This document shows positions 1 through 51,721 of a stretch of DNA of 64,000 nt, one piece after another; the stretch's first letter is position 1, and every line of letters starts with the position of its first letter. The notes beneath the pieces were generated by a model. It saw nothing but the letters and a program-made list of their open reading frames with translations. It was not told where the DNA came from and did no database searches. Both the position numbers and the translations under genes were made by a program. The DNA lies in assembly GCA_002269645.1 (NCBI GenBank), contig NIVC01001054.1, forward strand, positions 208,744 through 272,743, written 5' to 3'. The stretch comes from Macrostomum lignano. Lineage: Eukaryota.

Positions 1-1744
1 GTCCTATTGTCTGTCTACATGTCTGTGTCCTATTGTCTGTCTGCATGTCTGTCTCTTATTGTCTGTCTGCATGTCTGTCTCTTATTGTCTGTCTGCATGT
101 CTGTGCCTATTGTCTGTCTACATGTCTGTGTCCTATTGTCTGTCTGCATGTCTGTCTCTTATTGTCTGTCTACATATCTGTGTCCTATTGTCTGTCTGCA
201 TGTCTGTCTCTTATTGTCTGTCTGCATGTCTGTCTCTTATTGTCTGTCTGCATGTCTGTGTCCTATTGTCTGTCTGCATGTCTGTGCCTATTGTCTGTCT
301 ACATGTCTGTGTCCTATTGTCTGTCTGCATGTCTGTCTCTTATTGTCTGTCTACATGTCTGTGTCCTATTGTCTGTCTGCATGTCTGTCTCTTATTGTCT
401 GTCTACATATCTGTGTCCTATTGTCTGTCTGCATGTCTGTCTCTTATTGTCTGTCTGCATGTCTGTCTCTTATTGTCTGTCTGCATGTCTGTGTCCTATT
501 GTCTGTCTGCATGTCTGTCTCTTATTGTCTGTCTGCATGTCTGTCTCTTATTGTCTGTCTACATGTCTGTGTCCTATTGTCTGTCTGCATGTCTGTCTCT
601 TATTGTCTGTCTACATATCTGTGTCCTATTGTCTGTCTGCATGTCTGTCTCTTATTGTCTGTCTGCATGTCTGTCTCTTATTGTCTGTCTGCATGTCTGT
701 GCCTATTGTCTGTCTACATATCTGTGTCCTATTGTCTGTCTGCATGTCTGTCTCTTATTGTCTGTCTGCATGTCTGTCTCTTATTGTCTGTCTGCATGTC
801 TGTCTCTTATTGTCTGTCTGCATGTCTGTGCCTATTGTCTGTCTACATGTCTGTGTCCTATTGTCTGTCTGCATGTCTGTCTCTTATTGTCTGTCTACAT
901 ATCTGTGTCCTATTGTCTGTCTGGGTGTTTCTGTCCTATTGTCTGTCTGGGTGTTTCTGTCCTATTGTGTGTGGGTGTTTGTGTCCTGTTGTCTGTCTGG
1001 GTGTTTGTGTCCTATTGTCTGTCTGGGTGTTTGTGTCCTATTGTCTGTCTGGGTGTTTGTGTCCTATTGTCTGTCTGGGTGTTTGTGTCCTATTGTCTGG
1101 GTGTTTGTGTCCTATTGTCTGTCTGGGTGTTTGTGTCCTATTGTCTGTCTGGGTGTTTCTGTCCTATTGTGTGTCTGGGTGTTTGTGTCCTATTGTCTGT
1201 CTGGGTGTCTGTGTCCTATTGTCTGTCTGCGTGTTTCTGTCCTATTGTGTGTCTGGGTGTTTGTGTCCTATTGTGTGTCTGGGTGTTTGTGTCCTATTGT
1301 CTGTCTGGGTGTCTGTGTCCTATTGTCTGTCTGCGTGTTTCTGTCCTATTGTGTGTCTGGGTGTTTGTGTCCTATTGTGTGTCTGGGTGTTTGTGTCCTA
1401 TTGTCTGTCTGGGTGTCTGTGTCCTATTGTCTGCCTGGGTGTTTGTGTCCTATTGTCTGTCTGGGTGTTTGTGTCCTATTGTCTGTCTGGGTGTTTGTGT
1501 CCTATTGTCTGTCTGGGTGTTTCTGTCCTATTGTGTGTCTGGGTGTTTGTCTCCTATTGTCTGTCTGGGTGTTTGTGTCCTATTGTGTGTCTGGGTGTTT
1601 GTGTCCTATTGTCTGTCTGGGTGTTTGTGTCCTATTGTCTGTCTGGGTGTCTGTGTCCTATTGTCTGTCTGCATGTCTGTGTCCTATTGTCTGTCTGGGT
1701 GTCTGTGTCCTATTGTCTGTCTGCATGTCTATGTCCTATTGTCT
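1..1744. repeat. 26-bp minisatellite array, two sub-domains
   Basis: Unit GTCCTATTGTCTGTCTGCATGTCTGT (1 to ~915) switches to GTCCTATTGTCTGTCTGGGTGTTTGT (~915-1744). It explains the three overlapping ~570-600 aa ORFs. Confidence 0.97.
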
Positions 1745-3690
1745 TTCCGCCTAAATATGCCAAGTCTGATTTTGTGTTAGCAGAATTGAGGCATTTAAAA
1801 AAATAGAAATCAAGTCAACCAGGAGAGCCCCCATCAAGGGGGAAAGTCTGTCACAGTTGCCAGGAACGGAGTGGGTGGCAGCACAGGGACTCCGGAAGAA
1901 AGCTGGGATTTGAGGAAAATTTACACTTGGTCCAGTTCTTTCAACATCAGCATTGGTGAGAAAGTTCTTGGAAAGATGGAGGAGGCGACGGGGGGAAGCC
2001 AGAGACGCGGGCTTAACGGTCTGCCTGCTCAGGAAACCATGCCAAGCAAAAGCAGAAGTCTTGCACAAATGCGCGTGTGTGCGTGGCGATCTGGACCCTG
2101 CAGGGCTCTTGCGGTAATCAATAATTCACGGACTGAGTTCTTTCTCGCGCGGCACAGCTCCCAGCAACGCTACCACCCACCCAGTGTAAGGTGGGTGTAA
2201 TTTTTTCTCTTCACAATCAAGTCGCCTCCCTTCCTGAGTTGCTGCTTGGAGGAGCCGAAAGCTTACGGAGATGGGAGTGTTATAAAGTGTGCCTTTCTCT
2301 GTATGTTTCTCTAGGAGTCGATTTTTTAAGGTGTAAAGACGCAGACGCATTCCGCTTTCTTCATGCGATGTTTTGAACGTTACGTTCATTCTGATGGGAC
2401 TTTTGCACTAAGCATTCCAGCTCCCAAGGCACAGATAGTGTACCTGTCTGGCGATTAGAAAGTCAGGGCAGCTGTGCACCCTGTGTGAGCCTGTGTGTGA
2501 GTGCGTTTCTGTGTACAGCATTGCTGGTTAGTTGTGTGACGATGTCGCCGAGAGCGTTACGCCAAGTTGCCCCCAGCCCTTATGCAATTGTTATTAAAGA
2601 CGCGAATATAAATAATGCGATTAGAAGAGTGACTCGAATATTATAAAGACTTCTAAAGGTAAGATTCTTGTTTGTAAATATCAAAGGTGAAAGGTTCTGC
2701 AGTGGAGCCTGGGACTGAGTTCAAGCAACAATCTGCTTAGACTTGAAGACTTTTCCAAGAAAAGCACAGGACTTGTTTGGCAAAGTAACAACAACGAACC
2801 CAGCGCTGTTGGGTCTCAAGTTACAAAAGGAAAATTAATTTGAACACAGAAATGCAAGCATAAGACCCGCAACTGGGTCTCTGTTTTGAAAAAGAAGCCT
2901 GGAACAAGTATTAGAAAAGCGTCGAGATGAAATGCGAAGCCAGAATTTTTGACAAAAAAACAGATACAGAACCGAAAGCGACGAAACGCCTGCAGGAGCA
3001 GCAGGCCTTGGGGTGATCCATCCTAACAGCGAATTTGCTTTGGCTCGGACTGCAAAAGCTTCCATGCAGTCAGCTATATTTATACATACCTTCTACCTTT
3101 CCCTCTTCTACCTTGGGGGCATCGGGACTAACAAACACGCGGTGTATAGTAGCCCTGCAAAGGTGATTACACGCGCACACATACACACTCCAACAATAGC
3201 TGTCTGTTATACTGCCCTATTAATATACAATGCATTCGGGACCTGCTGTTGCATAGCTGCCTGCTGGCAGTACTGAATTCCCCCTCTGTTACTGTGGACC
3301 CTGGCATTTCTACATTCTTCTAAAAACCTCCAGCATCTGTGTTGGCAAACAGACACACAGCATACGGACACAAAGAGGATTTCCTTACTTCCCCGCAGCT
3401 GCAGCAGCTGGGGGCCATCAATATGCGCCTACTTAGCGGAACCAAAGGCAATCGAAACTGCGGAAGGAGGGCGACAAACCCTCCCAGCTACTGACCCTGT
3501 CCCAGCTGTCCCTACAGGGGAGATAAGATGCTGGCAGAGAAGGGGAAATGAAGACGGAAGTGCTGCTAAGAATATATGATGCGGCAACGTGGAGGCTGGG
3601 CCAGCCATTGGAATTCTTGGCTGCTGTGCCATGCTAGATGCGGCAGATTGCGGTGGGCCTCACAGCCTGACACTTCAGGCCTTGCACTGG

Positions 3691-3752
3691 AGAGACAGAC
3701 AGACAGACACACAGACAGACAGACAGGCAGACAAAAAGACACACAGACACTC

Positions 3753-3791
<39 letters not shown>

Positions 3792-3808
3792 AAGACACAC
3801 AGACACTA

Positions 3809-3865
<57 letters not shown>

Positions 3866-3936
3866 GGCAGACAAAAAGACACACAGACACTAAGACAGAC
3901 AGACAGACAGGCAGACAAAAAGACACACAGACACTA

Positions 3937-3977
<41 letters not shown>

Positions 3978-3998
3978 GGCAGACAGACAGACAGACAC

Positions 3999-4033
<35 letters not shown>

Positions 4034-4062
4034 CACAGACAGACAGACAGACAGACAGACAC

Positions 4063-4095
<33 letters not shown>

Positions 4096-4322
4096 AAGAC
4101 ACACAGACAGACACGAGAAGTCAGACAGACTCACAGACACACAGACAAAAAGACACACAGACACTAAGACTCACAGACACACAGACAAAAAGACACACAG
4201 ACACTAAGACACACAGACAGACAGACAAAAAGACACACATACACTAAGACAGACAGACAGACAAAAAGACACACAGACACTAAGACAGACAGACAAACAG
4301 GCAAAAACACACACAGACACTA

Positions 4323-4359
<37 letters not shown>

Positions 4360-4424
4360 GGCAGACAAAAAGACACACAGACACTAAGACAGACAGACAG
4401 ACAGGCAAAAACACACAGACACTA

Positions 4425-4499
<75 letters not shown>

Positions 4500-4676
4500 A
4501 AGGCACACAGACACTAAGACACACAGACAGACAGACAAAAAGACACACATACACTAAGACAGACAGACAGACAAAAAGACACACAGACACTAAGACAGAC
4601 AGAAAGACAGACAAAAAGACACACTAAGACAGACAGACAAAGACAAAAAGACACACAGGCAGACACGCAGACAGTC

Positions 4677-4733
<57 letters not shown>

Positions 4734-4752
4734 GGCAGGCAGACAAACAGGC

Positions 4753-4850
<98 letters not shown>

Positions 4851-4873
4851 ACAGAGAGACAGACAGACAGACT

Positions 4874-4905
<32 letters not shown>

Positions 4906-5058
4906 GGCAGGCAGGCAGGCAGGCAGACAGACAGACAGACAGACAGACAGGCAGGCAGGCAGGCAGGCAGGCACACAGACAGACACTAAGACAGACGCTA
5001 CAGACAGAAAGACGCTAAGACAGACTCTCGGAAACTAAGACAGACAGACAGACAGACA
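3691..5058. repeat. compound (GACA)n/(GGCA)n microsatellite
   Basis: Long GACA runs interrupted by CAAAAAGACACACAGACACTAA modules, with GGCA runs after ~4730. Confidence 0.97.
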
Positions 5059-10159: not shown

Positions 10160-10790
10160 TCTGAAAAAGACATGAGAGATGAAAGGGAGATAGAAGATGA
10201 GAGGTAAATGATAGATAAGAGGGAGATAAGAGATCATTTAAAAATGAGAGATGAGAAGGAGATGACAAATGACTGAGAGATAAGAGATGAGAGAGGGAAA
10301 TGAGAGACGAGAGATGATAGGGAGATAATAGATGAAAGGGAGATAAGAGATAAGAGTGAGATGAGAGATGAGAGAGAGATGAGATATGAAGGGGAGATGG
10401 TGGATGAGAGGGAGATAAGAGCTAAGAGGGAGATGAGATATGAGAGGGAGATGAGATATGAAGGGGAGATGAGAGATGAGAGGGAGATGAGAGTTAAGAG
10501 GGAGATGAGATGTACGAGAAGGAGATGAGATATATGAGAGGGAGATGAGATATGAAGGGGAGATGAGAGATGAAAGGGAGATGAGAGTTAAGAGGGAGAT
10601 TAGATATGAGAGGGAGATGAGAGATGAGATTCAGATGAGAGAGGGAGATGAGAGATGATAGGGAGATAAGAGATGAAAGGGAGATGAGAAATAAGAGGGA
10701 GAAGAGAGATGAGAGGGAGATGAGAGGTGAGAAGGAGATGAGAGATGAGAAGATAAGATGCAGAAATGAAATGAGGGGAAAAAGAGTTGT
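10160..10790. repeat. purine-rich degenerate GAGATGAGA/GGGAGAT repeat
   Basis: Almost purely G/A/T with a recurring GAGATGAGA motif. Confidence 0.85.
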
Positions 10791-11086: not shown

Positions 11087-14000
11087 CTGCTGCAGAAGAG
11101 CCGTCAGAACCGACTGGGCAGCAACGGTGACATCCAGGAGGTGCGCAAGCATCCGTTCTTTGCCACCATCGACTGGCAGCTCCTTGAGCAGCGCAAGATT
11201 GAGCCGCCGTTCAAACCGAAGCTGATGAGTCCGCTGTCTACTGAGTACATTGACTCTGAGTTCACGAGGGAACCAGTGCCGCGTGAGTGCCATTTTTCTA
11301 TTTTTGCGTGCCATTTTCTAGCTGAGTGCGCCATTTGCTGGTTAGGGGTGCCATTTTCATATTTGGGTGTGTCATTTCCTTATTTGGGTGTGCCATTTCC
11401 ATATTTGGGTGTGCCATTTCCTTATTTGGGTGTGCCATTTCCATATTTGGGTGTGCCATTTCCTTATTTGGGTGTGCCATTTCCATATTTGGGTGTGCCT
11501 TTTCCATATTTAGGTGTGCCATTTCCATATTTGGGTGTGCCTTTTCCATATTTGGGTGTGCCATTTCCATATTTGGGTGTGGCATTTCCATATTTGGGTG
11601 TGCCTTTTCCTTATTTGGGTGTGCCATTTCCATATTTGGGTGTGCCTTTTCCTTATTTGGGTGTGCCATTTCCATATTTGGGTGTGCCTTTTCCATATTT
11701 GGGTGTGCCATTTCCATATTTGGGTGTGCCTTTTCCTTATTTGGGTGTGCCTTTTCCTTATTTGGGTGTGCCATTTCCATATTTGGGTGTGCCTTTTCCT
11801 TATTTGGTGTGCCATTTCCATATTTGGGTGTGCCTTTTCCTTATTTGGGTGTGCCATTTCCTTATTTGGGTGTGCCATTTCCGCATTTGGGTGTGCCATT
11901 TCCATATTTGGGTGTGCCATTTCCGCATTTGGGTGTGCCATTTCCATATTTGGGTGTGTCATTTCCATATTTGGGTTGCCATTTCCTAGTTGGGTGTGGC
12001 ATTTCCCTGTTTGGGTGTGCCATTTCCCTATTTGGGTGTGCCATTTCCCTGTTTGGGTGTGCCATTTCCCTGTTTGGGTGTGCCATTTCCCTGTTTGGGT
12101 GTGCCATTTCCCTATTTGGGTGTGCCATTTCCCTGTTTGGGTGTACCATTTCCCTGTTTGGGCGTGGCATTTCCCTGTTTGGGTGTGCCATTTCCCTGTT
12201 TGGGTGTGGCATTTCCCTGTTTGGGTGTGGCATTTCCTAGTTGGGTGTGCCATTTCCCTGTTTGGGTGTGGCATTTCCCTGTTTGGGTGTACCATTTCCC
12301 TGTTTGGGCGTGGCATTTCCCTGTTTGGGTGTGCCATTTCCCTGTTTGGGTGTGGCATTTCCCTGTTTGGGTGTGGCATTTCCCTGTTTGGGTGTGGCAT
12401 TTCCTAGTTGGGTGTGGCATTTCCTAGTTGGGTGTGGCATTTCCCTGTTTGGGTGTGGCATTTCCCTGTTTGGGTGTGCCATTCCCGATGGGAAAAGGGC
12501 AGCCTCTAATTTTTACCCTAGCCTCAAACGCAGCCTCGAATGAACCTCAAAGTGGATTTTTTGAGGCTGGTTAGATGCTAGCCTCAAAAATAATCTTTAA
12601 CCTCAAAAGAGATTGTATTTGATGCTGGATTTGAGGCTAGAGTAGAGGTTCAAATTAGAGTCTGAGATAGAGGCTAGATTCGAGGCTGGATTAGAGGCTT
12701 TTTTTGAGCCTGGATTTGACGTTTAATTTAGAGGCTAAATTCGAGGCTGGATTAGAGGCTTTATTTGAGCCTGGATTTGACGTTTAATTTAGAGGCTAAA
12801 TTCGAGGCTGGATTAGAGGCTTTTTTTGAGCCTGGATTTGACGTTTAACTTAGAGGCTAAATTCGAGGCTGGATTAGAGGCTTTATTTGAGCCTGGATTT
12901 GACGTTTAATTTAGAGGCTAAATTCGAGGCTGGATTAGAGGCTTTATTTGAGCCTGGATTTGACGTTTAATTTAGAGGCTAAATTCGAGGCTGGATTAGA
13001 GGCTTTATTTGAGCCTGGATTTGACGTTTAATTTAGAGGCTAAATTCGAGGCTGGATTAGAGGCTTTATTTGAGCCTGGATTTGACGTTTAATTTAGAGG
13101 CTAAATTCGAGGCTGGATTAGAGGCTTTATTTGAGCCTGGATTTGATGTTTAATTTAGAGGCTAAATTCGAGGCTGGATTAGAGGCTTTATTTGAGCCTG
13201 GATTTGATGTTTAATTTAGAGGCTAAATTCGAGGCTGGATTAGAGGCTGGATTAGAGACTGAATTAGAGGCTGGATTAGAGACTGGATTCGAGGCTCAAT
13301 TAGAGACTGGATTCGAGGCTCAATTAGAGGCTGGATTAGAGGCTGTATTAGAGACTGAATTAGAGGCTGGATTAGAGACTGGATTCGAGGCTCAATTAGA
13401 GACTGGATTCGAGGCTCAATTAGAGGCTGGATTAGAGGCTGTATTAGAGACTGAATTAGAGGCTGGATTAGAGACTGGATTCGAGGCTCAATTAGAGACT
13501 GGATTCGAGGCTCAATTAGAGGCTGGATTAGAGGCTGTATTAGAGACTGAATTAGAGGCTGGATTAGAGACTGGATTCGAGGCTCAATTAGAGACTGGAT
13601 TCGAGGCTCAATTAGAGGCTGGATTAGAGGCACAGCACTCATGGAAGACAAGGAGAGGCTCCAGGCGGCATTGGATGAGCTTTCACGTGACCATGACACG
13701 GAGGCGCAGTCTGTCGAAGGAAAAGTATCCAGCATGAAGGCTGATTTGCACCAGCTTGCCCTCGAGTATCGGCAGACTTGTACTTCCTTCCGAAACTCGG
13801 TGCGGATCATCTCATCGGTTGATAAAATGCTAGAGGACGCGAACAAAATCCACGCGCGTGCACGCACCGAGCTCGCCAAGATGGCGGAATTCTGCTCCGA
13901 CTCGCCAGCCACAATAGTTGACTCCTCCATGGCCACTGAAGTGGAGTCCTTAGGGATCACCTTGGCTGTTAACACTCGTGCGAGTGACAGTACGTCCGGT

Positions 14001-17000
14001 AGCACCACTATCAAAAAACCGGTGTCTTTGATACAGAAGGTCGCCCTCATTGACGCGTTCCCCACCGTAAAAGTGACGGACGACAGCATGCGCGGTATTG
14101 AAACAGCCATCAAGAGATACCACGATGCCAAGGAAGTTGCTCAACGAAAGCGCCTACTTGGCGTCGCTTACTCCACAATACTGCGGGCTGTCTTCTCTGA
14201 GGAGCAGCTTCAGACGTGTGTCTGGGAAGGACGAAAGGTAAAGAATGGCACCAACCGGTCGGCCGTCGACCCGATGCAGAAAGAGGCCGTCATTCAATTC
14301 GTTAAATCGAACGGCCTAGACCCAAGCCGCCTGTCACTTTACTTCAATCGCCTCGCCGCTTACGGCCGCAGTAAACTATCGGGCGCCGGTGGCGAGACGG
14401 AGGCCGGTGGCGGGACGGAGGCCGATGGCGAGACGGAGGCCGGTGGCGAGACGGAGGCCGGTGGCGGGACGGAGGCCGGTGGCGAGACGGAGGCCGGTGG
14501 CGGGACGGAGGCCGGTGGCGGGACGGAGGCCGGTGGCGAGACCGAGACCGGTGGCGGGACGGAGGCCGATGGCGAGACGGAGGCCGGTGGCGAGACGGAG
14601 GCCGGTGGCGGGACGGAGGCCGGTGGCGAGACGGAGGCCGGTGGCGGGACGGAGGCCGGTGGCGGGACGGAGGCCGGTGGCGAGACCGAGACCGGTGGCG
14701 GGACGGAGGCCGATGGCGAGACGGAGGCCGGTGGCGAGACGGAGGCCGGTGGCGGGACGGAGGCCGGTGGCGAGACGGAGGCCGGTGGCGGGACGGAGGC
14801 CGGTGGCGGGACAGAGGCCGGTGGCGGGACGGAGGCCGGTGGCGAGACCGAGGCCGGTGGCGAGACCGAGGCCGTGTTGTAGTAGGCGAAACGTAAGAAC
14901 TGATAACGGTACGAGGATTGTGATTCGCTGACAAATGTGACTATTAAACAAGTAAAAAAAGAAACTCTTAATAATCAATGTCACACTTCTCAACATAGTC
15001 ACCCCGGAGCTGAACACATTTGTGCCATCTTTCAGGCAGCTTGTCGAGGCCCTGGGCGAAGAATTTTCTGGGGACACTTCGCAACCACTGGTTGATCGCA
15101 GAGCCAAAAGCAGAAAGGCTTCCATAGCAGTGACCACGAAGTGGCTCTTTAATTTTCTCTAAGAGCACCCGCTGGATGTTCTCATCAGAGGTAGATGCTA
15201 GAGGTAGAGGTGGAGGTAGAAAGATACAGGATTTTCTGTCTTATATGAAGGCTAGAAGTAATATTTTCCATAGACATAACTGTCATGAGCCCTAGAGTCC
15301 TAGGCTAAAGTATAAACTCAAGTAAAAAAATACAAAAGAAACTAGAGATGTTTGTCAGCAGATTTATGACACATCCCTCGTAAAAAGAAACCAGCCTCTT
15401 TCTTTCTTTCTTTCTTTCGTTTTATTAATCGTAGCTTATTAATAAATCGCCAGCCTCTAATTGAGCCTCTAATTGAGCCTCTAACTGAGCATCAAATCGC
15501 CAGCCTCTAATTGAGCCTCTAATTGAGCCTCTAATTGAGCCTCTAACTGAGCATCAAATCGCCAGCCTCTAATTGAGCCTCTAATTCAGCCTCTAACTGA
15601 GCATCAAATCGCCAGCCTCTAATTGAGCCTCTAATTGAGCCTCTAACTGAGCATCAAATCGCCAGCCTCTAATTGAGCCTCTAATTGAGCCTCTAACTGA
15701 GCATCAAATCGCCAGCCTCTAATTGAGCCTCTAATTGAGCCTCTAATTGAGCCTCTAATTGAGCCTCTAACTGAGCATCAAATCGCCAGCCTCTAATTGA
15801 GCCTCTAATTGAGCCTCTAATTGAGCCTCTAACTGAGCATCAAATCGCCAGCCTCTAATTGAGCCTCTAATTGAGCCTCTAATTGAGCCTCTAACTGAGC
15901 ATCAAATCGCCAGCCTCTAATTGAGCCTCTAATTGAGCCTCTAATTGAGCCTCTAACTGAGCATCAAATCGCCAGCCTCTAATTGAGCCTCTAATTGAGC
16001 CTCTAATTGAGCCTCTAACTGAGCATCAAATCGCCAGCCTCTAATTGAGCCTCTAATTGAGCCTCTAATTCAGCCTCTAACTGAGCATCAAATCGCCAGC
16101 CTCTAATTGAGCCTCTAATTCAGCCTCTAACTGAGCATCAAATCGCCAGCCTCTAATTGAGCCTCTAATTCAGCCTCTAACTGAGCATCAAATCGCCAGC
16201 CTCTAATTGAGCCTCTAATTCAGCCTCTAACTGAGCATCAAATCGCCAGCCTCTAATTGAGCCTCTAATTCAGCCTCTAACTGAGCATCAAATCGCCAGC
16301 CTCTAATTGAGCCTCCAAAACGAGCCTCAAATTGCCAGTCTCTAATTGAGCCTCCAAAACGAGCCTCAAATTGCCAGCCTCTAATTGAGCCTCCAATACG
16401 AGCCTCAAATTGCCAGCCTCTAATTGAGCCTCCAATACGAGCCTCAAATTGCCAGCCTCTAATTGAGCCTCCAATACGAGCCTCAAATTGCCAGCCTCTA
16501 ATTGATCCTCCAATATGAGCCTCAAATTGCCAGCCTCTAATTGAGCCTCCAATACGAGCCTCAAATTGCCAGCCTCTAATTGAGCCTCCAATACGAGCCT
16601 CAAATTGCAAGCATCAAATCTGGGTCATTTTTAGAGGCTGCGACACCCAAGAGTCGAGCCTCTAACCCAGCCTCTAGCCTCCCATTGGTTTAGTGTAACC
16701 AAATAAAAAAAATCATTAGAGGCTAGCACCAAAAAGTGAGCCTCCAACACCCCTCCAGATTTTCCATCGGGATTTCCCTGTTTGGGTGTGCCATTTCCCT
16801 GTTTGGGTGTGGCATTTCCCTGTTTGTGTGTGCCATTTCCCTGTTTGGGTGTGGCATTTCCCTGTTTGGGTGTGGCATTTCCCTGTTTGGGTGTGCCATT
16901 TCCCTGTTTGGGTGTGGCATTTCCCTGTTTGGGTGTGGCATTTCCCTGTTTGGGTGTGGCATTTCCCTGTTTGGGTGTGGCATTTCCCTGTTTAGGTGTG

Positions 17001-19098
17001 GCATTTCCTAGTTGGGTGTGGCATTTCCCTGTTTAAGTAGCCATTTCCCTGTTTGGGTGTGGCATTTCCTAGTTGGGTGTGGCATTTCCCTGTTTGGGTG
17101 TGGCATTTCCCTGTTTGGGTGTGGCATTTCCCTGTTTGGGTGTGGCATTTCCCTGTTTGGGTGTGCCATTTCCCTGTTTGGGTGTGGCATTTCCCTGTTT
17201 GGATGTGCCATTTCCCTGTTTGGGTGTGGCATTTCCCTGTTTGGGTGTGCCATTTCCCTGTTTGGGTGTGGCATTTCCCTGTTTGGGTGTGGCATTTCCC
17301 TGTTTGGGTGTGGCATTTCCCTGTTTGGGTGTGGCATTTCCCTGTTTGGGTGTGGCATTTCCTAGTTGGGTGTGCCATTTCCCTGTTTGGGTGTGGCATT
17401 TCCCTGTTTGGGTTGCCATTTCCCTGTTTGGGTTGCCATTTCCCTGTTTGGGTGTGGCATTTCCCTGTTTGGGTGTGGCATTTCCCTGTTTGGGTGTGGC
17501 ATTTCCTAGTTGGGTGTGGCATTTCCTAGTTGGGTGTGGCATTTCCCTGTTTGGATGTGGCATTTCCCTGTTTGGGTGTGCCATTTCCCTGTTTGGGTGT
17601 GCCATTTCCCTGTTTGGGTGTGGCATTTCCCTGTTTGTGTGTGCCATTTCCCTGTTTGGGTGTGGCATTTCCCTGTTTGGGTGTGGCATTTCCCTGTTTG
17701 GGTGTGCCATTTCCCTGTTTGGGTGTGGCATTTCCCTGTTTGGGTGTGGCATTTCCCTGTTTGGGTGTGGCATTTCCCTGTTTGGGTGTGGCATTTCCCT
17801 GTTTGGGTGTGGCATTTCCTAGTTGGGTGTGGCATTTCCCTGTTTGGGTAGCCATTTCCCTGTTTGGATGTGGCATTTCCTAGTTGGGTGTGGCATTTCC
17901 CTGTTTGGGTGTGGCATTTCCCTGTTTGGGTGTGGCATTTCCCTGTTTGGGTGTGGCATTTCCCTGTTTGGGTGTGCCATTTCCCTGTTTGGGTGTGGCA
18001 TTTCCTAGTTGGGTGTGGCATTTCCCTGTTTGGGTAGCCATTTTCCTGTTTGGGTGTGGCATTTCCCTGTTTGGGTGTGGCATTTCCCTGTTTGGGTGTG
18101 GCATTTCCCTGTTTGGGTGTGGCATTTCCCTGTTTGGGTGTGGCATTTCCCTGTTTGGGTGTGGCATTTCCTAGTTGGGTGTGGCATTTCCCTGTTTGGG
18201 TGTGGCATTTCCCTGTTTGGGTGTGCCATTTCCCTGTTTGGGTGTGGCATTTCCCTGTTTGGGTGTGGCATTTTCCTGTTTGGGTGTGCCATTTCCCTGT
18301 TTGGGTAGCCATTTCCCTGTTTGGGTGTGGCATTTCCCTGTTTGGGTGTGGCATTTCCTAGTTGGGTGTGGCATTTCCCTGTTTGGGTTGCCATTTCCCT
18401 GTTTGGGTGTGGCATTTCCCTGTTTGGGTTGCCATTTCCCTGTTTGGGTGTGGCATTTCCCTGTTTGGGTGTGGCATTTCCTAGTTGGGTGTGGCATTTC
18501 CCTGTTTGGGTAGCCATTTCCCTGTTTGGGTGTGGCATTTCCCTGTTTGGGTGTGGCATTTCCTAGTTGGGTGTGGCATTTCCCTGTTTGGGTTGCCATT
18601 TCCCTGTTTGGGTGTGGCATTTCCCTGTTTGGGTGTGGCATTTCCCTGTTTGGGTGTGGCATTTCCCTGTTTGGGTGTGGCATTTCCCTGTTTGGGTGTG
18701 GCATTTCCCTGTTTGGGTGTGGCATTTCCCTGTTTGGGTGTGGCATTTCCTAGTTGGGTGTGGCATTTCCCTGTTTGGGTGTGGCATTTCCCTGTTTGGG
18801 TGTGGCATTTTCCTGTTTGGGTGTGGCATTTCCCTGTTTGGGTGTGGCATTTCCTAGTTGGGTGTGCCGTTATATTTCTAAAGAGTTATGCCACTTTTCA
18901 ATAGTTGACTGTGTCATTTCTAGTTGCCAAACTTAACTGTACTCTTCAACCTGCTCCTTCCATCCATTTTCCCCAGAATCTGTCGGACGCTCCATCAAAA
19001 TCAGCGCCAGCGTTCAGGAGGCCGACAACGACTTCATGGGATTCTCCTACGTGCCGCCGACCTTTGTTGATTCCGCTGGCTTGGGCACCGACCTGTGA
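11087..19098 (+). CDS. SGK: serum/glucocorticoid-regulated kinase, last two exons (partial; upstream exons not found in window)
   Basis: Exon 11087-11282 (ccgcag|...|gtgagt) = LLQKSRQNRLGSNGDIQEVRKHPFFATIDWQLLEQRKIEPPFKPKLMSPLSTEYIDSEFTREPVP. It joins in phase 1 to exon 18977-19098 (ccccag|) = QSVGRSIKISASVQEADNDFMGFSYVPPTFVDSAGLGTDL*. This is an AGC-kinase C-tail with SGK-type EFT.EPVP..S.G and hydrophobic motif FxxFSY. Intron is 7694 bp. Confidence 0.9.
11343..12480. repeat. 21-bp minisatellite, left part (SGK intron)
   Basis: Unit TGGGTGTGCCATTTCCATATT, switching to TGGGTGTG(G/C)CATTTCCCTGTT at ~11990. Confidence 0.97.
12660..13630 (+). repeat. left subterminal array of the element (GAGGCT motif; 61-bp then 96-bp higher-order units of 12-mers)
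   Basis: 61-bp unit TTTAATTTAGAGGCTAAATTCGAGGCTGGATTAGAGGCTTTATTTGAGCCTGGATTTGACG (copies at 12721, 12782...), then 12-mers such as TTAGAGGCTGGA/TTAGAGGCTCAA in 96-bp blocks. Confidence 0.93.
13641..14882 (+). CDS. 413-aa element-encoded protein: N-terminal coiled coil + BEN-like domain + (GGETEA)n acidic tail
   Basis: Intact ATG-TAG intronless ORF. The segment ILRAVFSEEQLQTCVWEGRKVKNGTNRSAVDPMQKEAVIQFV (~14180-14305) fits the BEN pattern L...lFs.eeL....G.......+.alDp.....i..fv. Residues ~1-85 look like heptad coiled coil. 18-bp repeats at 14389-14875 encode GGETEA/GGGTEA. Confidence 0.75.
   Translation: MEDKERLQAALDELSRDHDTEAQSVEGKVSSMKADLHQLALEYRQTCTSFRNSVRIISSVDKMLEDANKIHARARTELAKMAEFCSDSPATIVDSSMATEVESLGITLAVNTRASDSTSGSTTIKKPVSLIQKVALIDAFPTVKVTDDSMRGIETAIKRYHDAKEVAQRKRLLGVAYSTILRAVFSEEQLQTCVWEGRKVKNGTNRSAVDPMQKEAVIQFVKSNGLDPSRLSLYFNRLAAYGRSKLSGAGGETEAGGGTEADGETEAGGETEAGGGTEAGGETEAGGGTEAGGGTEAGGETETGGGTEADGETEAGGETEAGGGTEAGGETEAGGGTEAGGGTEAGGETETGGGTEADGETEAGGETEAGGGTEAGGETEAGGGTEAGGGTEAGGGTEAGGETEAGGETEAVL
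14968..15200 (-). mobile_element. mariner (Tc1/mariner) transposase remnant, internally deleted
   Basis: Minus frame ASTSDENIQRV-LLEKIKEPLRGHCYGSLSAFGSAINQWLRSVPRKFFAQGLDKLPERWHKCVQLRGDYVEK. The C-terminal part matches the mariner tail (G..KL..RW.KC....GDYVEK). The DDD catalytic core is absent. Confidence 0.85.
15444..16615 (-). repeat. right subterminal array of the element (reverse complement of left-arm motif)
   Basis: 12-mer GCCTCTAATTGA repeated in 45/57-bp units with CTGAGCATCAAATCGCCA spacers, then 39-bp units from ~16310. TTGAGCCTCTAA is the reverse complement of left-arm TTAGAGGCTCAA. Confidence 0.93.
16775..18866. repeat. 21-bp minisatellite, right part (continuation of array split by the element)
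   Basis: Unit TGGGTGTGGCATTTCCCTGTT with a 20-bp ..TTCCTAGT variant; same variant as immediately left of 12484. Confidence 0.97.
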
Positions 19099-23389: not shown

Positions 23390-26300
23390 ATGGCGTCAGC
23401 TCAGGTAACGACTAATCTAATTGATTGATTCTAATTATTCTACGAAGAATAAATTTCGAAAGAATAACGATTTTGTCAATTCACATTTTTCAATCTAGGA
23501 TGAGGGCATGGATTTCCACAAGGCCTTCCTGTCGATCGATACGGACCAATCTGGCGAAATCACAGTTGATGAGCTGCAAAGGTGAGGCTGCATGGGTTCT
23601 TCTGGGTAGCCTTTGAACCAAGTAGCTGCAAGTTGCAGGGCGTGCCAATGTCTAACAAGTGCTATCGTGTCTAACAGGTGCTATCGTGTCTAACAGTTGC
23701 TATCGTGTCTAACAGGTGCTATCGTGTCGAACAGGTGCTATCGTGTCTAACAGGTGCTATCGTGTCTAACAGGTGCTATCGTGTCTAACAGGTGCTATCG
23801 TGTCTAACAGTTGCTATCGTGTCTAACAGGTGCTATCGTGTCTAACAGGTGCTACCGTGTCTAACAGGTGCTATCGTGTCTAACAGGTGCTATCGTGTCT
23901 AACAGGTGCTATCGTGTCTAACAGGTGCTATCGTGTCTAACAGTTGCTATCGTGTCTAACAGGTGCTATCGTGTCTAACAGGTGCTACCGTGTCTAACAG
24001 GTGCTATCGTGTCTAACAGGTGCTACCGTGTCTAACAGGTGCTATCGTGTCTAACAGGTGCTATCCTGTCTAACAGGTGCTATCGTGTCTAACAGGTGCT
24101 ATCGTGTCTAACAGGTGCTACCGTGTCTAACAGGTGCTATCGTGTCTAACAGGTGCTATCCTGTCTAACAGGTGCTATCGTGTCTAACAGGTGCTATCGT
24201 GTCTAACAAGTTCTATCAAGTCTAACGGGTGCTATCATGTCTAACAAGTGCTATCGTGTCTAACAGTTGCTATCAAGTCTAACAGATGACACCATCATGT
24301 CTAACAAGTGCTATCGTGTCTAACAGTCGCTATCAAGTCTAACAGATGACACCATCATGTCTAACAGGATAATATCATCATGTCTAATAGGATGACACCA
24401 CCATGTCTAACAGGATAATATCATCATGTCTAATAGGATGACACCATCATGTCTAACAGGATAATATCATCATGTCTAATAGGATGACACCACCATGTCT
24501 AACAGGTAACACCATCATGTCTAACAGGATAACATCATCATGTCTAACAGGTAACACCATCATGTCTAACAGGATAACATCATCATGTCTAATAGGATGA
24601 CACCACCATGTCTAACAGGTAACACCACCATGTCTAACAGGTAACACCATCATGTCTAACATCCCCCCTACCGCAGCTACTGCCGCAAGATGAACTACCA
24701 AGAGACGTTCGTGCAGAAGTGGCTGATGCTGTTCGACGCTGATCAAAACGGCCGCATCACCTACGACGAATACTGCAACGCGCTGGGCCTCCCGCCTAAG
24801 AAGGACGTCGTTGCCAAGCACAAGTCGCAGCAGAGCAAAGGCAAAAAGGTTAGGAAAAAACTTGATTTCACCTACTATGAGTAGCATTATGTAGAAATGT
24901 GTTTTTTGCATTTTGCTTCAGTCTGGCAAGACGGCACGTGCGGTGAAAGTTGCGAAGAGACGTAAGGAGCAGGAAGAGACGCGGGTCACTGTGGAGACTG
25001 TGAAGCCGCCTGTGCAAGAGGAGGTCGTGCAGGTAAAATTAACAATTTTTTTTACATAACCACTTATGAGACAATTTAGTGGTGGGTTGAGAGTTGCGAC
25101 ATGAACAGATTAGACAGGTAGGATGGGGTGAGGCATTTAGTTGAAGGGGTGAGACAGGGAGATAAAGGGATTCGACAGAGAGATGAAGGGGTGAGACATG
25201 TAGTTGAATGGGTGAGACAGGTATATGAATGGGTGAGACAGGTATATGAAGGGGTGAGACAGGTATATGAAGGGGTGAGACAGATAGATGAAGGGATGAG
25301 ACCGGTAGATGAAGGGGTGAGACAGGGAGATGAAGGGGTGAGACAGATAGATGAAGGGGTGAGACAGGTAGATGAAAGGGTGAGACAGGTAGATGAAAGG
25401 GTGAGACAGGTAGATGAAAGGGTGAGACAGGGAGATGAAGGAGTGAGACAGGTAGATGAAAGGGTGAGACAGGTAGATGAAGGGGTGAGACAGGTAGATG
25501 AAGGGGTGAGACAGGTAGATGAAGGGGTGAGACAGATAGATGAAGGGGTGAGACAGGTAGATGAAGGGGTGAGACAGGTAGATGAAAGGGTGAGACAGGT
25601 AGATGAAGGATGGGACAGGTAGATAAAGGGTGAGACAGTTAGATAAAGGGGTGATACAGGTAGATGAAGGGTGAGACAGGTAGAGAAGGGGCTGATACAC
25701 ATGACAAAGAAACACTAATTAACATTTTCCTGCAATTGAAAAGGCAGCTGCAGTTGCCCCCGTAGCCGCCTCCAAGGCTGCTGCAGCCGGTCAGGCACCT
25801 CAGCCGCCGCCGTCGCAGGCCCCCAGTCGCCGCAGCCGTATCCGCAATGAGCAGCTGAGCTACAGCGGGGTGATGCTCCACAGTCGGGCTCGGGTGTTTC
25901 AACGCAAAGCCCTGTACAGGCTGGCCAAGAAGTCGGCGGCCAACAAGCTGGCCAGGAAGCTGAAGGGAGCGGCCAGCACCGCCGCTCAGCAGCGACCGGC
26001 CGTGGTTGAGAAGCCCATCGGCGGCGATAAGAATGGAGGGATTCGGCAGGTAGGCCGGAGGCGAGAAGAAATTTTCCACCAAAGACTAATCTAGAAATTG
26101 CCCACACTCTAGACAAAGTGAGTAATTTCCCTTGCTAGAAAAAGTGAGAAATTCCCCTCTCTAGACAAAGTGAGAAATTCCCCTCTCTAGACAAAGTGAG
26201 AAATTCCCCTTGCCCCTTGCTAGACAAAGTAAGAAATTCCCCTCTCTAGACAAAGTGAGAAATTCCCCTTGTCCCTTGCTAGACAAATTGAGAAATTCCC

Positions 26301-47055: not shown

Positions 47056-47489
47056 TCCCTAAACAGCGTTACACCTGTCTTCAAAAGGCGATTCAGTTCA
47101 CTACTTCAGTTATACAGAAAATACTCAGTAATGCGTCTTTCTAGATAAGCAAATTTACTAAACATTGTTGTTTTTAATTCGAGTCTGAACTGCATATACA
47201 ATATGATTGTTTCTTAGTAGCAATCTTGTATAGTAATGACTTTATGATCCTATTATGTTCATTAATCTATTTTGATTCTAACCTCAACCATATTGCACAG
47301 ACTAATGTAAATATACGCATGTCTGTTGGTCATAATAGTATATATATGGAATCTGATTAATTTCTTCGATGACATTCATTAATGTCCTTTGTAAATCACT
47401 TTCTTTCATTTTAATATTCCTATTGTATTTTGACATCGAATAGTTATCCAGAATATAACTCTTAGCGATTCCGAGGTGGATTGAAATAG

Positions 47490-48510
47490 GGAGATGGGGT
47501 AAGGCAGGGAGATGAGATGTTGTGAGACAGGGAGATGAGATGTTGTGAGACAGGGGGGTGAGATGGGGAGAAACAGGGTGATGAGATGTTGTGAGACAGG
47601 GAGATGGATGAGGTGACAGTAATGGAGTTGGGATAAGACACTGAGATGGATGAGGTGACAGTGAGGTAGATGGGATAAGACACTGAGATGGATGAGGTGA
47701 CAGTGAGGTAGATGGGATAAGACACTGAGATGGATGAGGTGACAGTGAGGTAGATGGGATAAGACACTGAGATGGATGAGGTGACAGTGAGGGAGATGGG
47801 ATAAGACACTGAGATGGATGAGGTGACAGTGAGGGAGATGGGATAAGACACTGAGATGGATGAGGTGACAGTGAGGGGAGATGGGATAAGACACTGAGAT
47901 GGATGAGGTGACAGTGAGGGAGATGGGATAAGACACTGAGATGGATGAGGTGACAGTGAGGGGAGATGGGATAAGACACTGAGATGGATGAGGTGACAGT
48001 GAGGGGAGATGGGATAAGACACTGAGATGGATGAGGTGACAGTGAGGGGAGATGGGATAAGACACTGAGATGGATGAGGTGACAGTGAGGGGAGATGGGA
48101 TAAGACACTGAGATGGATGAGGTGACAGTGAGGGAGATGGGATAAGACACTGAGATGGGTGAGGTGACAGTGAGGGAGATGGGATAAGACACTGAGATGG
48201 ATGAGGTGACAGTGAGGGAGATGGGTTAAAACACTGAGATGGATGAGGTGACAGTGAGGGAGATGGGATAAGACACTGAGATGGATGAGGTGACAGTGAG
48301 GGAGATGGGATAAGACACTGAGATGGATGAGGTGACAGTGAGGGAGATGGGATAAGACACAGATGGATGAGGTGACAGTGAGGGGAGATGGGATAAGACA
48401 CTGAGATGGATGAGGTGACAGTGAGGGAGATGGGATAAGACACTGAGATGGATGAGGTGACAGTGAGGGAGATGGGATAAGACACTGAGATGGATGAGGT
48501 GACAGTGATG
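47490..48510. repeat. 42/43-bp minisatellite
   Basis: Unit GAGATGGATGAGGTGACAGTGAGGGAGATGGGATAAGACACT. Confidence 0.96.
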
Positions 48511-48597
48511 GAGATAAAGTCAGTCTAAAAGTAGCATCAAAGACGCCACAGATTTGACTTACTGCGTGTGGCTCGTCTCGCACTCCGCAGCAGTGAG

Positions 48598-51348
<2,751 letters not shown>

Positions 51349-51721
51349 TTTATCACCCATGGTTTGGGGACAGGATTGACAACGAATTTATGGTTTCTGA
51401 TCTGCCCAGTGAGCTCTGCAGTGAATTTTGGTCAGTTTATTATGACTGTAGCTTATTTCTGTCTGTCTGTGTGTCCTGTGTTTATCTATGTAATATAATC
51501 ATGAATACTCATTTATTAATAAATACAGAATTAAGCTAAAACGGCCCGTTTTAATTAACTCAACGTTCTAGTGTTTTATATTCAAAACCATTTATAAATT
51601 TTTATGAGAGAAGTGTTTGGATCAAATGACTCAATTAAATGTCAGCCAGTGGCCAAATTTTCCGGGTTTTTGGTTGAAGTTTTTACTTGCTACTATCGAA
51701 TATCGATGTTTCATAATATGG

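What the first reader, a model, noticed from the sequence alone, without database searches (positions are those of the whole stretch)
12484..16771. Transposase-less, BEN-protein-encoding foldback transposon with an En/Spm-like layout, inserted in a minisatellite in the SGK intron
Seen: 12-bp TIR (CCCGATGG(G/A)AAA, 11/12), a 3-bp ATT duplication that exactly restores the host 21-bp unit, ~1.0-kb and ~1.2-kb arms of a 12-bp motif (TTAGAGGCTCAA/TTGAGCCTCTAA) in opposite orientations, mixed-orientation copies in the outer ~150 bp, and one intact 413-aa ORF. Established: maize En/Spm has 13-bp TIRs, 3-bp TSDs and 12-bp subterminal motifs bound by an element-encoded non-catalytic protein (TnpA); CMC termini begin C(A/C)C; BEN is a sequence-specific DNA-binding domain. 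Inference: a non-autonomous CMC-like family (or PHIS-like, since ATT fits an ANT TSD) in which a coiled-coil BEN protein plays the TnpA role and binds dozens of GAGGCT sites on its own arms. I do not know of a described element with this combination.
Basis: partly seen in the sequence, partly recalled or inferred. Interest (0 to 1): 0.88.

Follow-up and report, generated by a model that had tools for sequence, protein, structure and literature searches.

The report
Foldback transposon carrying BEN-like gene
A 4.3-kb mobile DNA element with no working transposase, built from two long mirror-image arrays of a 12-base motif, sits in an intron of a flatworm kinase gene and carries one gene for a probable DNA-binding (BEN-fold) protein; this is an unusual but not unprecedented kind of transposon, and whether the protein binds the element's own arms is untested.

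Summary
At 12484-16771 of this Macrostomum lignano window, an insert interrupts a 21-bp minisatellite in the last intron of an SGK-like kinase gene. It has 11/12 inverted termini (CCCGATGG...), an ATT duplication that restores the host unit, arms of about 1.0 and 1.2 kb of ATTAGAGGCT-type 12-mers in opposite orientation, and an intact 413-aa ORF. A second copy at a different locus is about 99.9% identical in unique sequence and ends at the same terminal base, so the element moved recently.

The BEN call is supported by predicted structure only. Every good Foldseek hit is a BEN domain, but no Pfam BEN hit was found. The BEN-like domain shows purifying selection (hand-counted dN/dS about 0.15).

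The interpretation needs correcting:
- The termini are CCC...GGG, not the CAC...GTG hallmark of CACTA/Chapaev elements.
- ATT is not the TWA target typical of PIF/Harbinger, so the superfamily is unresolved.
- The interior also holds a mariner transposase 3' relic, so it is a mosaic.
- The protein family is tiny: three sequences among about 15 billion.
- Binding of the BEN protein to the arms is pure inference (about 0.3).

Verdict: a new variant of foldback-like non-autonomous transposons, of moderate interest.

The parts
12481..12483 (.). Left copy of the ATT target-site duplication (host minisatellite unit)
   Evidence: Removing the insert plus one ATT restores the 21-bp unit in phase.
12484..12495 (+). 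Left terminal inverted repeat, CCCGATGGGAAA
12496..12616 (.). Left subterminal region with GAGGCT/AGCCTC hexamers in mixed orientation (-,-,-,+,-)
12617..13631 (+). Left arm. Tandem 12-mers (ATTAGAGGCTGG, TTAGAGACTGGA, TTCGAGGCTCAA) are organised in 61-bp and then 96-bp higher-order units. It holds 50 GAGGCT copies, all on the + strand. It ends 9 nt before the ORF's ATG.
13641..14882 (+). Intact 413-aa ORF. It has a long N-terminal helix (aa 2-86), a linker, a BEN-like five-helix domain, and an acidic (GGETEA)n tail.
   Evidence: A transcript-based gene model exists for the L001 copy.
14073..14381 (+). BEN-like domain (aa ~145-247): five helices plus a middle loop
   Evidence: AF2 model with pLDDT 78 and pTM 0.74. 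Foldseek top hits are Bsg25A, Insv, BANP, BEND6 and NACC1 BEN domains and bracovirus BEN proteins. It is about 75% identical to L002, with hand-counted dN/dS ~0.15.
14385..14874 (+). 18-bp in-frame coding minisatellite: 27 copies here, 18 in the second element copy
14883..15192 (-). Relic of a mariner transposon 3' end: about the last 74 codons of the transposase plus about 85 nt downstream. It is also present in the second copy.
   Evidence: Mos1 residues 301-345, E 7e-5; SETMAR, E 0.002. (582/584 identical in L001). The extent upstream of the HMMER match is my reading.
15193..15443 (.). Internal unique or low-complexity spacer, including (CTTT)n
15444..16620 (-). Right arm. Tandem TTGAGCCTCTAA 12-mers are organised in 50/62-bp and then 39-bp higher-order units. 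It holds 75 GAGGCT copies, all on the - strand.
16621..16759 (.). Right subterminal region with mixed-orientation hexamers (+,-,-,-,+,-). It is 100% identical in the second copy.
16760..16771 (-). Right terminal inverted repeat (reverse complement CCCGATGGAAAA)
16772..16774 (.). Right copy of the ATT target-site duplication
11087..11282 (+). Host context: penultimate exon of an SGK-like AGC kinase, followed by a GTGAGT donor at 11283
   Evidence: SGK1, E 1.4e-16. (Pkinase_C)..
18975..19098 (+). Host context: last exon with the hydrophobic motif FMGFSY and the stop codon. The start coordinate is approximate.

Best explanation
This is a recently mobile, non-autonomous, foldback-type cut-and-paste DNA transposon of Macrostomum lignano.

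Shown:
- It has 12-nt imperfect TIRs and a 3-bp (ATT) duplication at a precisely restorable host site.
- It has two roughly 1-kb arms of the same 12-bp motif in inverted orientation.
- It has no transposase of its own.
- A second, near-identical copy at another locus ends at the same base.
- It carries one intact, transcribed gene whose C-terminal domain is predicted to adopt the BEN DNA-binding fold and has evolved under purifying selection.
- It also carries a dead mariner fragment.

Inferred:
- It is mobilised in trans by an unidentified DDE transposase that makes 3-bp staggered cuts and recognises the CCCGATGG termini.
- The roughly 130 GAGGCT-type sites in the arms act as a high-avidity platform for a sequence-specific DNA-binding protein that pairs the two ends.
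- That binder is either the DNA-binding domain of the missing transposase (as with Galileo's THAP domain) or the element's own coiled-coil plus BEN protein (as with En/Spm TnpA). I put the BEN-binds-own-arms step at about 0.3.
For: - TIR, target-site duplication (TSD) and restored host unit.
- Motif statistics and strict arm polarity.
- Second copy (L001, Mlig_3_7 contig NIVC01002201.1): identical right terminus, unrelated flank TAATTACTGTCC(CTGT)n, 0 substitutions in 800 nt of the ORF region and 2 in 584 nt of the interior. It differs only in array copy numbers and one 1-nt indel.
- No transposase-size ORF in the element or elsewhere in the window.
- Fold: domain model with pLDDT 78 and pTM 0.74. 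The best PDB hits are five different BEN proteins (prob 0.9-1.0, TM 0.5-0.63, rmsd 2.2-2.6 A). The best viral hits are bracovirus BEN proteins. The model has five helices plus a middle loop, which is the published criterion (PMC10789644).
- Sequence hint: a sub-threshold DUF4806 hit. DUF4806 is described as a BEN subtype (PMC11075544).
- Selection: between the window and L002, codons 169-245 show about 33.5 synonymous and 26.5 non-synonymous differences. That gives pS ~0.6, pN ~0.16 and dN/dS ~0.15 (hand count).
- Transcription: BOX15_Mlig026769g4 comes from a genome-guided transcriptome annotation.
- Precedents: Galileo's THAP domain binds tandem repeats in its long TIRs (PMC3688188). DBD1 of the Tn3 TnpA transposase is BEN-like and binds the transposon's inverted repeat (PMC9579193).
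Against: - Only one complete copy and one partial copy were seen, so TSD length and target preference rest on a single locus. A 2-bp AT reading, with one extra T on the element, is also compatible.
- No autonomous partner was found.
- BEN is not detected by any sequence method. The Foldseek E-values are weak (0.02-0.9), and the model was made from a single sequence.
- The homolog L002 has no arm repeats within 106 bp upstream or 69 bp downstream, and it is itself disrupted.
- The interior is a mosaic containing a mariner relic. As in other foldback middle domains (PMC4079207), this fits a passenger gene.
- The L001 ORF copy carries a frameshift. This may be a long-read assembly error.
Confidence: 0.72

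Rival explanations
1. Passenger gene. The BEN-like ORF, like the mariner fragment, is cargo that ended up between the arms of a foldback element by capture, nested insertion or deletion. It plays no part in transposition. The arms are bound only by the trans-acting transposase.
For: - The interior is a mosaic with a mariner 3' relic on the opposite strand.
- The L002 homolog is not next to arm repeats, and its reading frame stays open 33 codons upstream of the aligned start.
- Middle domains of foldback elements vary in composition (PMC4079207).
- The protein family is tiny and not TE-like in abundance.
Against: - No separate host paralog exists in the M. lignano annotation or in about 15 billion proteins. 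The only M. lignano homolog is the element-borne copy.
- The array stops 9 nt before a complete ORF whose start aligns with the start of the homolog.
- The DNA-binding-like domain shows long-term purifying selection.
Confidence: 0.4
2. One reading: a CMC (En/Spm-like) non-autonomous family in which the coiled-coil BEN protein is the TnpA analogue and binds the 12-bp subterminal motifs.
For: - A 3-bp TSD at this locus, a short TIR, and subterminal motifs in both orientations followed by polarised arrays.
- A BEN-like fold.
- CACTA elements have subterminal repeats and 3-bp TSDs (PMC8978399).
Against: - The termini are CCC...GGG, not the invariable CAC...GTG of Chapaev (PMC4079192) or the CACTA motif.
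- No CMC transposase was found.
- Binding is untested.
Confidence: 0.12
3. A PIF/Harbinger-ISL2EU (PHIS)-type non-autonomous element. These insert into A/T-only 2-3-bp targets, and their accessory DNA-binding protein is a separate ORF.
For: - The flanks are A/T-only: ATT here, and TAA at the right flank of L001, which fits TWA.
- PIF elements make 3-bp TSDs and ISL2EU elements make 2-bp TSDs, typically AT (PMC4122938). An AT reading is possible here.
- PIF/Harbinger elements normally need a second DNA-binding ORF (my knowledge).
Against: - ATT is not TWA.
- No transposase or Myb-like ORF is present.
- Long tandem-repeat arms are not typical of this group.
Confidence: 0.2
4. Not a transposon. 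The structure is a locally formed palindromic satellite, or a segmental duplication, that happens to be bounded by short inverted sequences.
For: - The M. lignano genome is rich in tandem repeats and duplicated blocks (PMC5730564).
- Both copies lie in or beside tandem arrays.
Against: - The host unit is restored exactly with a 3-bp duplication, and an 11/12 inverted match lies exactly at the borders.
- The second copy ends at the same nucleotide with an unrelated flank.
Confidence: 0.04

Closest known systems
Foldback-like DNA transposons (Drosophila FB, Tetris, Galileo; nematode Tm1)
   Same: - Long inverted arms are built from tandem repeats whose higher-order structure changes from the tip inward.
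- The middle domain is short and variable.
- Most copies are non-autonomous and copy number is low.
- Galileo shows that a DNA-binding domain can recognise multiple sites in such arms (PMC3688188, PMC4079207).
   Different: - Known foldback elements have 7-10-bp TSDs and belong to the Mutator or P superfamilies (PMC4079207). This element has 3 bp, or possibly 2.
- Its repeat unit is only 12 bp.
- Its middle domain carries an intact BEN-like gene.
En/Spm (CACTA) and Chapaev elements (CMC)
   Same: - 3-bp TSD and a short TIR.
- Subterminal motifs of about 12 bp in direct and inverted orientation.
- In En/Spm, an element-encoded non-catalytic DNA-binding protein, TnpA (my knowledge; PMC8978399 for the layout).
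   Different: - The termini are CCC...GGG rather than CAC(TA)...GTG (PMC4079192).
- There is no transposase ORF.
- The arms are about 1-kb regular arrays rather than a few hundred bp of scattered motifs.
- The candidate binder has a BEN-like fold and is unrelated to TnpA.
BEN-solo DNA-binding factors (Insensitive, Elba1/Bsg25A, Elba2; BEND5/6) and the DUF4806 BEN subtype
   Same: - A single C-terminal domain of five helices plus a middle loop, preceded by a helical or coiled-coil region.
- The predicted structure superposes on Bsg25A, Insv and BEND6 at 2.2-2.6 A.
   Different: - No significant sequence similarity: Pfam BEN gives no hit, and DUF4806 reaches only E 0.11.
- The gene is encoded inside a transposon.
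- It has a long acidic (GGETEA)n tail.
- The DNA target is unknown. GAGGCT resembles none of the known BEN motifs I recall, namely CCAATTGG, CCAATAAG and TCTCGCGAGA (my knowledge).
Mariner (Tc1/mariner) transposons
   Same: The minus-strand segment at about 14971-15105 encodes the last ~45 residues of a mariner transposase (Mos1 301-345).
   Different: Only a 3' relic is present. The host element's TIRs and its non-TA flanks are not mariner-like, so the relic is a nested or captured remnant, not the element's own machinery.

Membership tests
Foldback-like transposons (structural class) | Long terminal inverted arms composed of tandem repeats, with a short middle domain | tested here: met
   The arms span 12617-13631 and 15444-16620 and have opposite polarity. 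The middle domain is 1.8 kb.
Foldback-like transposons (Mutator/P affiliation) | TSD of 7-10 bp (PMC4079207) | tested here: not met
   ATT, 3 bp, at the one complete locus.
CMC: CACTA/Chapaev | Termini 5'-CAC(TA)...GTG-3' (PMC4079192) | tested here: not met
   The termini are 5'-CCCGATGG...CCATCGGG-3' in both copies.
CMC: CACTA/Chapaev | 2-4-bp (typically 3-bp) TSD | tested here: inconclusive
   A 3-bp ATT at one locus. A 2-bp AT reading is also possible. The left end of the second copy is missing.
CMC: CACTA/Chapaev | DDE transposase with the CMC signature, in this copy or an autonomous relative | not testable with these tools
   The element and the window contain no transposase. No M. lignano genome was searchable.
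PIF/Harbinger (PHIS) | 3-bp TSD with TWA consensus | tested here: inconclusive
   The length fits. ATT is not TWA. The right flank of L001, TAA, would fit.
PIF/Harbinger (PHIS) | Transposase plus a Myb-like second ORF | tested here: not met
   The only ORFs are the BEN-like one and the mariner relic.
BEN domain (Pfam PF10523 / DUF4806 subtype) | Significant match to the family HMM | tested here: not met
   PF10523 gives no hit at E<=10. DUF4806 reaches E 0.11-0.14 at 13 bits, against a cut-off of 25. PDB sequence and profile searches find no BEN chain.
BEN domain (structural definition, PMC10789644) | Five alpha-helices plus a middle loop in a globular arrangement, with a reverse structural search returning solved BEN domains | tested here: met
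   The model has helices at aa 147-162, 166-184, 187-192, 211-223 and 228-247, with a loop at 193-210. The top PDB hits are Bsg25A, Insv, BANP, BEND6 and NACC1. The top viral hits are bracovirus BEN proteins. This rests on a prediction, not a solved structure.
En/Spm TnpA-like accessory system | An element-encoded protein binds the subterminal 12-bp motifs | not testable with these tools
   This needs EMSA, DAP-seq or CUT&RUN. No co-varying relatives are available.
Tc1/mariner | TA TSD and mariner-type TIRs at the element ends | tested here: not met
   The flanks are ATT/ATT. The TIR, CCCGATGG, is unrelated. Only an internal transposase relic is present.

The most novel reading that the evidence does not exclude
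A transposon family whose only gene is a BEN-solo-type protein acting as a TnpA-like architectural factor. The protein would oligomerise through its N-terminal helix, coat the roughly 130 GAGGCT sites on the two inverted arms, and so pair the ends or shield them from silencing, for a transposase supplied in trans. This would be the first eukaryotic mobile element shown to use a BEN domain for end recognition. It would parallel the BEN-like DBD1 of bacterial Tn3 transposases and would suggest a transposon origin for some BEN-solo chromatin factors.
Probability: 0.2. Interest if true: 0.75.

Novelty: new variant of a known kind. Interest (0 to 1): 0.45.

Why it matters
- **A recently active transposon in a model flatworm.** Two copies about 99.9% identical at different loci point to a DNA transposon that was active very recently. 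Macrostomum lignano is a regeneration and stem-cell model in which transposon-mediated transgenesis has so far failed (PMC5730564). Finding the partner transposase could provide a native tool.
- **A foldback layout on new machinery.** The element shows the foldback architecture arising on a transposition system that makes 3-bp TSDs. This supports the view that foldback structure evolves repeatedly.
- **A possible link between BEN proteins and mobile DNA.** If the BEN-like protein does bind the arms, BEN-solo insulator and repressor proteins would be tied to mobile-element end recognition. The arms would also give a ready-made array of about 130 sites for studying BEN-DNA recognition.
- **If not.** It is one more non-autonomous element with a passenger gene in a repeat-rich genome.

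Tried and rejected
- **Pfam.** Scans of the whole ORF, its first 248 aa, the domain alone and the repaired L002 domain gave no BEN hit.
- **PDB by sequence.** A single-sequence search and a 2-sequence profile search found no BEN chains.
- **Homolog searches.** All three word-indexed protein searches and the exhaustive HMMER search found only P0001 (the L001 copy) and P0002/P0003 (both on L002).
- **Chimeric query.** A 1,097-aa query joining arm-, terminus- and interior-encoded ORFs, meant to fish out other copies, found nothing.
- **Exact look-up.** The 413-aa product is not on record.
- **Metagenome scan.** The arm dimer TTAGAGGCTNNATTAGAGGCT gave 50 loci, each with a single isolated hit and no arrays, so these are chance matches.
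- **Paralogous empty site.** A search of the window for the L001 flank found none.
- **Python sandbox.** It was lost. dN/dS was therefore counted by hand from the alignment and is approximate.
- **Papers not held.** Yuan & Wessler 2011 and Pan et al. 2023. The statement that 'CMC termini begin C(A/C)C' could not be checked against its source.
- **Rejected reading.** I considered that the element derives from a mariner. The TIR and TSD do not fit, and the relic is antisense and 5'-truncated.
- **Rejected reading.** I considered that the arm repeats encode part of the protein. They are in a different frame, with stops in the ORF frame.

Full report
**What is in the sequence.**
Reading 12000-17300 confirms the description. 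A 21-bp minisatellite (unit GTGCCATTTCCCTGTTTGGGT) spans 11287-12483 and 16772-18866. It is interrupted by a 4,288-bp insert at 12484-16771.

- The insert starts CCCGATGGGAAA and ends TTTTCCATCGGG, an 11/12 inverted match whose first 8 nt are perfect.
- ATT flanks both sides. Deleting the insert plus one ATT restores the host unit in phase.
- The borders are set independently by the minisatellite, so an 11/12 inverted match exactly there has a chance of about 2e-6 (my arithmetic). The 13-mer alone, allowing 2 mismatches, would not be remarkable in 64 kb.
- The duplication could also be read as 2 bp (AT) if the element carries one extra T on its left. In the second copy the base after ...CCATCGGG is T, not A, so the right end does stop at GGG.

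**Arms.**
Tandem Repeats Finder gives a left arm at 12617-13631 (periods 12, 24, 61) and a right arm at 15444-16620 (periods 12, 50, 62).

- All 94 TTAGAGGCT copies in the window lie inside the element, against 0.5 expected.
- Of 155 GAGGCT hexamers, 138 lie inside the element, which is 6.7% of the window. Fifty are on the + strand in the left arm and 75 on the - strand in the right arm.
- The outer ~150 bp hold mixed orientations: -,-,-,+,- at the left and +,-,-,-,+,- at the right.
- The shared core is ATTAGAGGCT plus two variable bases.
- The two arms have different higher-order repeats and pair at only 80-84% over about 73 nt. They therefore expanded independently around one motif.
- Beyond the 12-nt TIR, the two ends are not homologous.

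**Organism and host gene.**
The ORF's only close database match is BOX15_Mlig026769g4 of Macrostomum lignano.

- Upstream, 11087-11282 (+) is an exon that best matches SGK1 (E 1.4e-16). It has a cag| acceptor and a |GTGAGT donor.
- The AGC hydrophobic-motif exon (…FMGFSYVPP…stop) lies at about 18975-19098 (+).
- The element and the minisatellite therefore occupy the last intron of an SGK-like gene, on the same strand as the ORF.

**Second copy and mobility.**
The protein look-up returned locus L001, the end of contig NIVC01002201.1 in assembly Mlig_3_7. It holds the same element from inside the left arm to the right terminus.

- The last 157 bp are 100% identical and end at the same ...TTTTCCATCGGG.
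- The flank is then unrelated: TAATTACTGTCC followed by (CTGT)223.
- Unique sequence is almost identical. There are 0 substitutions and one 1-nt deletion in 800 nt across the ORF, and 2 substitutions in 584 nt of the interior.
- The arrays differ in copy number. The coding 18-mer has 27 versus 18 copies, and the right arm is 1.18 versus 1.39 kb.
- This is what a very recent transposition looks like. The contig ends before the left terminus of L001, so its TSD is unknown.
- The gene model comes from a genome-guided transcriptome annotation (PMC5730564), so the ORF region is transcribed. In that annotation, transcripts clustered at 95% identity share a name prefix. The 'g4' suffix hints at further loci, but I could not test this.

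**The ORF.**
It is 413 aa: 248 unique residues followed by (GGETEA)n.

- The exhaustive HMMER search of 1.84 billion cluster representatives found three hits. These were P0001 (the frameshifted L001 copy) and P0002 plus P0003.
- P0002 and P0003 are two overlapping calls on one 1,128-bp Logan contig (L002, run SRR31628403).
- When repaired, L002 is 50% identical overall and about 75% identical in the C-terminal domain. It has GTG where this ORF has ATG, two frameshifts, and TGA in place of Trp195.
- L002 has no arm repeats within 106 bp upstream or 69 bp downstream.
- I hand-counted codons 169-245 on the alignment. This gave about 33.5 synonymous and 26.5 non-synonymous differences, so pS ~0.6, pN ~0.16 and dN/dS ~0.15. 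The domain has been under purifying selection for most of the divergence.

**BEN or not.**
Sequence methods do not find BEN. Pfam gives only a sub-threshold DUF4806 hit (E 0.11-0.14) over aa 176-208, and PDB sequence and profile searches give nothing relevant. DUF4806 is described as a BEN subtype (PMC11075544, citing Pan et al. 2023).

Structure prediction is clearer.

- The 248-aa model (pLDDT 58) has a helix spanning aa 2-86, and it already put the Insv BEN domain first.
- The domain-only model (aa 125-250; pLDDT 78, pTM 0.74) has five helices and a middle loop. That is the published structural criterion for BEN (PMC10789644).
- All of its low-rmsd PDB hits are BEN domains from five proteins: Bsg25A, Insv, BANP, BEND6 and NACC1. 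Probabilities are 0.9-1.0, target-normalised TM-scores 0.5-0.63, and rmsd 2.2-2.6 A over 75-84 columns.
- Its top viral hits are bracovirus BEN proteins.
- The E-values are weak (0.02-0.9) and the model comes from a single sequence.
- I rate 'BEN-like fold' at about 0.75-0.8.

**Interior mosaic.**
On the minus strand, 14971-15105 encodes the last ~45 residues of a mariner transposase (Mos1 301-345, E 7e-5; SETMAR, E 0.002).

- By my reading, the similarity extends to about 15192. The ~85 nt between the relic's stop codon and 14883 is about the size of a mariner 3' UTR plus TIR.
- The relic's end abuts the BEN ORF's TAG stop (14880-14882). A mariner insertion may therefore have created the present C-terminus. 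This is speculative.
- The relic is shared by L001, so it predates the last transposition.
- The element has no working transposase, but it is not free of transposase-derived sequence. Its middle domain has accumulated foreign DNA.

**Classification.**
A 3-bp TSD is compatible with several superfamilies:

- CACTA/Chapaev (CMC);
- PIF/Harbinger (PMC4079192, PMC4122938);
- Zator or Academ (from my own knowledge).

The hallmark termini of Chapaev (CAC...GTG) and of CACTA are not met, because this element has CCC...GGG. ATT is not the TWA of PIF/Harbinger or Chapaev3, although TAA beside L001 would fit. ISL2EU elements make 2-bp AT duplications (PMC4122938), which the alternative reading would match.

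Known foldback elements have 7-10-bp TSDs and belong to the Mutator or P superfamilies (PMC4079207). The layout here is foldback-like, but the machinery differs. The window contains no transposase-size ORF. The superfamily stays unresolved.

**Mechanism.**
Shown: a non-autonomous TIR element that moved recently and carries a conserved, transcribed gene with a BEN-like fold.

Inferred: a trans-acting DDE transposase makes 3-bp staggered cuts. The dense, strictly polarised motif arrays act as multivalent binding platforms that bring the ends together.

- Galileo shows such arrays bound by a transposase THAP domain (PMC3688188).
- En/Spm TnpA shows a separate accessory protein doing this (my knowledge).
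- DBD1 of the Tn3 TnpA transposase shows a BEN-like fold reading transposon ends (PMC9579193).

For the view that the element's own BEN protein is the binder:
- It is the only gene in the element.
- It is selectively constrained.
- It has no host paralog in M. lignano.
- It starts 9 nt from the array.

Against that view:
- L002 has no adjacent arrays.
- The interior is a mosaic.
- The family is tiny.
- There are no binding data.

I put arm-binding by the BEN protein at about 0.3, and a passenger gene at about 0.4.

**Novelty and score.**
This is a new variant of foldback-like non-autonomous transposons. The new features are a 3-bp TSD, 12-bp-unit arms, and a BEN-like gene as cargo. It is not a new category.

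Hydra genomes show DUF4806 expanded alongside transposase domains (PMC7642931). TE-borne BEN-subtype domains may therefore already exist unrecognised.

The reason is that the exciting part, a TnpA-like BEN protein, remains an untested inference, and the CMC assignment fails a hallmark test.

**Limits.**
- No M. lignano genome could be searched.
- All attempts to find more copies failed.
- The script machine was lost.
- Two key papers were not held.

Noticed in passing
window 14883-15192 (- strand): The interior of the element holds a 3' relic of a mariner transposon: about the last 74 codons of the transposase plus a stretch the size of a 3' UTR and TIR. The second copy shares it. Its predicted end abuts the BEN ORF's stop codon at 14880-14882, so the ORF's present C-terminus may have been created by that insertion.
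   Followed up: partly
window 14385-14874; L001 1256-1582: An in-frame 18-bp coding minisatellite encoding (GGETEA)n has 27 copies here and 18 in the other element copy, even though the surrounding unique sequence is identical. Array turnover is therefore much faster than point substitution.
   Followed up: partly
window 11287-12483 and 16772-18866: About 158 units of a 21-bp minisatellite fill most of the last intron of the SGK-like gene. The array begins only 5 nt after the GTGAGT splice donor at 11283.
   Followed up: no
L001 3708-4614: The second element copy lies 6 nt from a (CTGT)223 microsatellite. Both known insertions are in or beside tandem arrays. This could reflect a target preference, or simply the genome's 15% content of simple and tandem repeats (PMC5730564).
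   Followed up: no
L002 1-1128 (Logan SRR31628403): This is the only non-M. lignano homolog of the ORF. It has GTG at the aligned start, two frameshifts and a TGA for Trp195. Its frame stays open and coiled-coil-like for 33 codons upstream. The source organism is unknown.
   Followed up: partly
window 12668-13240: Each 61-bp higher-order unit of the left arm holds three forward GAGGCT motifs plus one degenerate reversed copy (TTGAGCCTGG, whose reverse complement is CCAGGCTCAA). The left arm is therefore not purely unidirectional at the level of degenerate sites.
   Followed up: no
window 1-1800, 3580-5015, 10172-10750, 25076-25715, 29589-31309, 36708-37211, 47302-48583, 50299-51350: The window is crowded with other micro- and minisatellite arrays, including (GTCT)n-derived, purine-rich 18-mers and others. 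These generate long spurious ORFs. No transposase-like ORF was seen among ORFs of 160 aa or more.
   Followed up: no
window 31344-31835 (+): A 163-aa ORF begins with non-repetitive, cysteine-rich sequence (…CQRQCCGNQRAFEMTVEDNTGQEVIHISRPYKCMCYG…) resembling a phospholipid-scramblase-type motif. It then runs into a tandem array. It may be an exon of a neighbouring gene.
   Followed up: no
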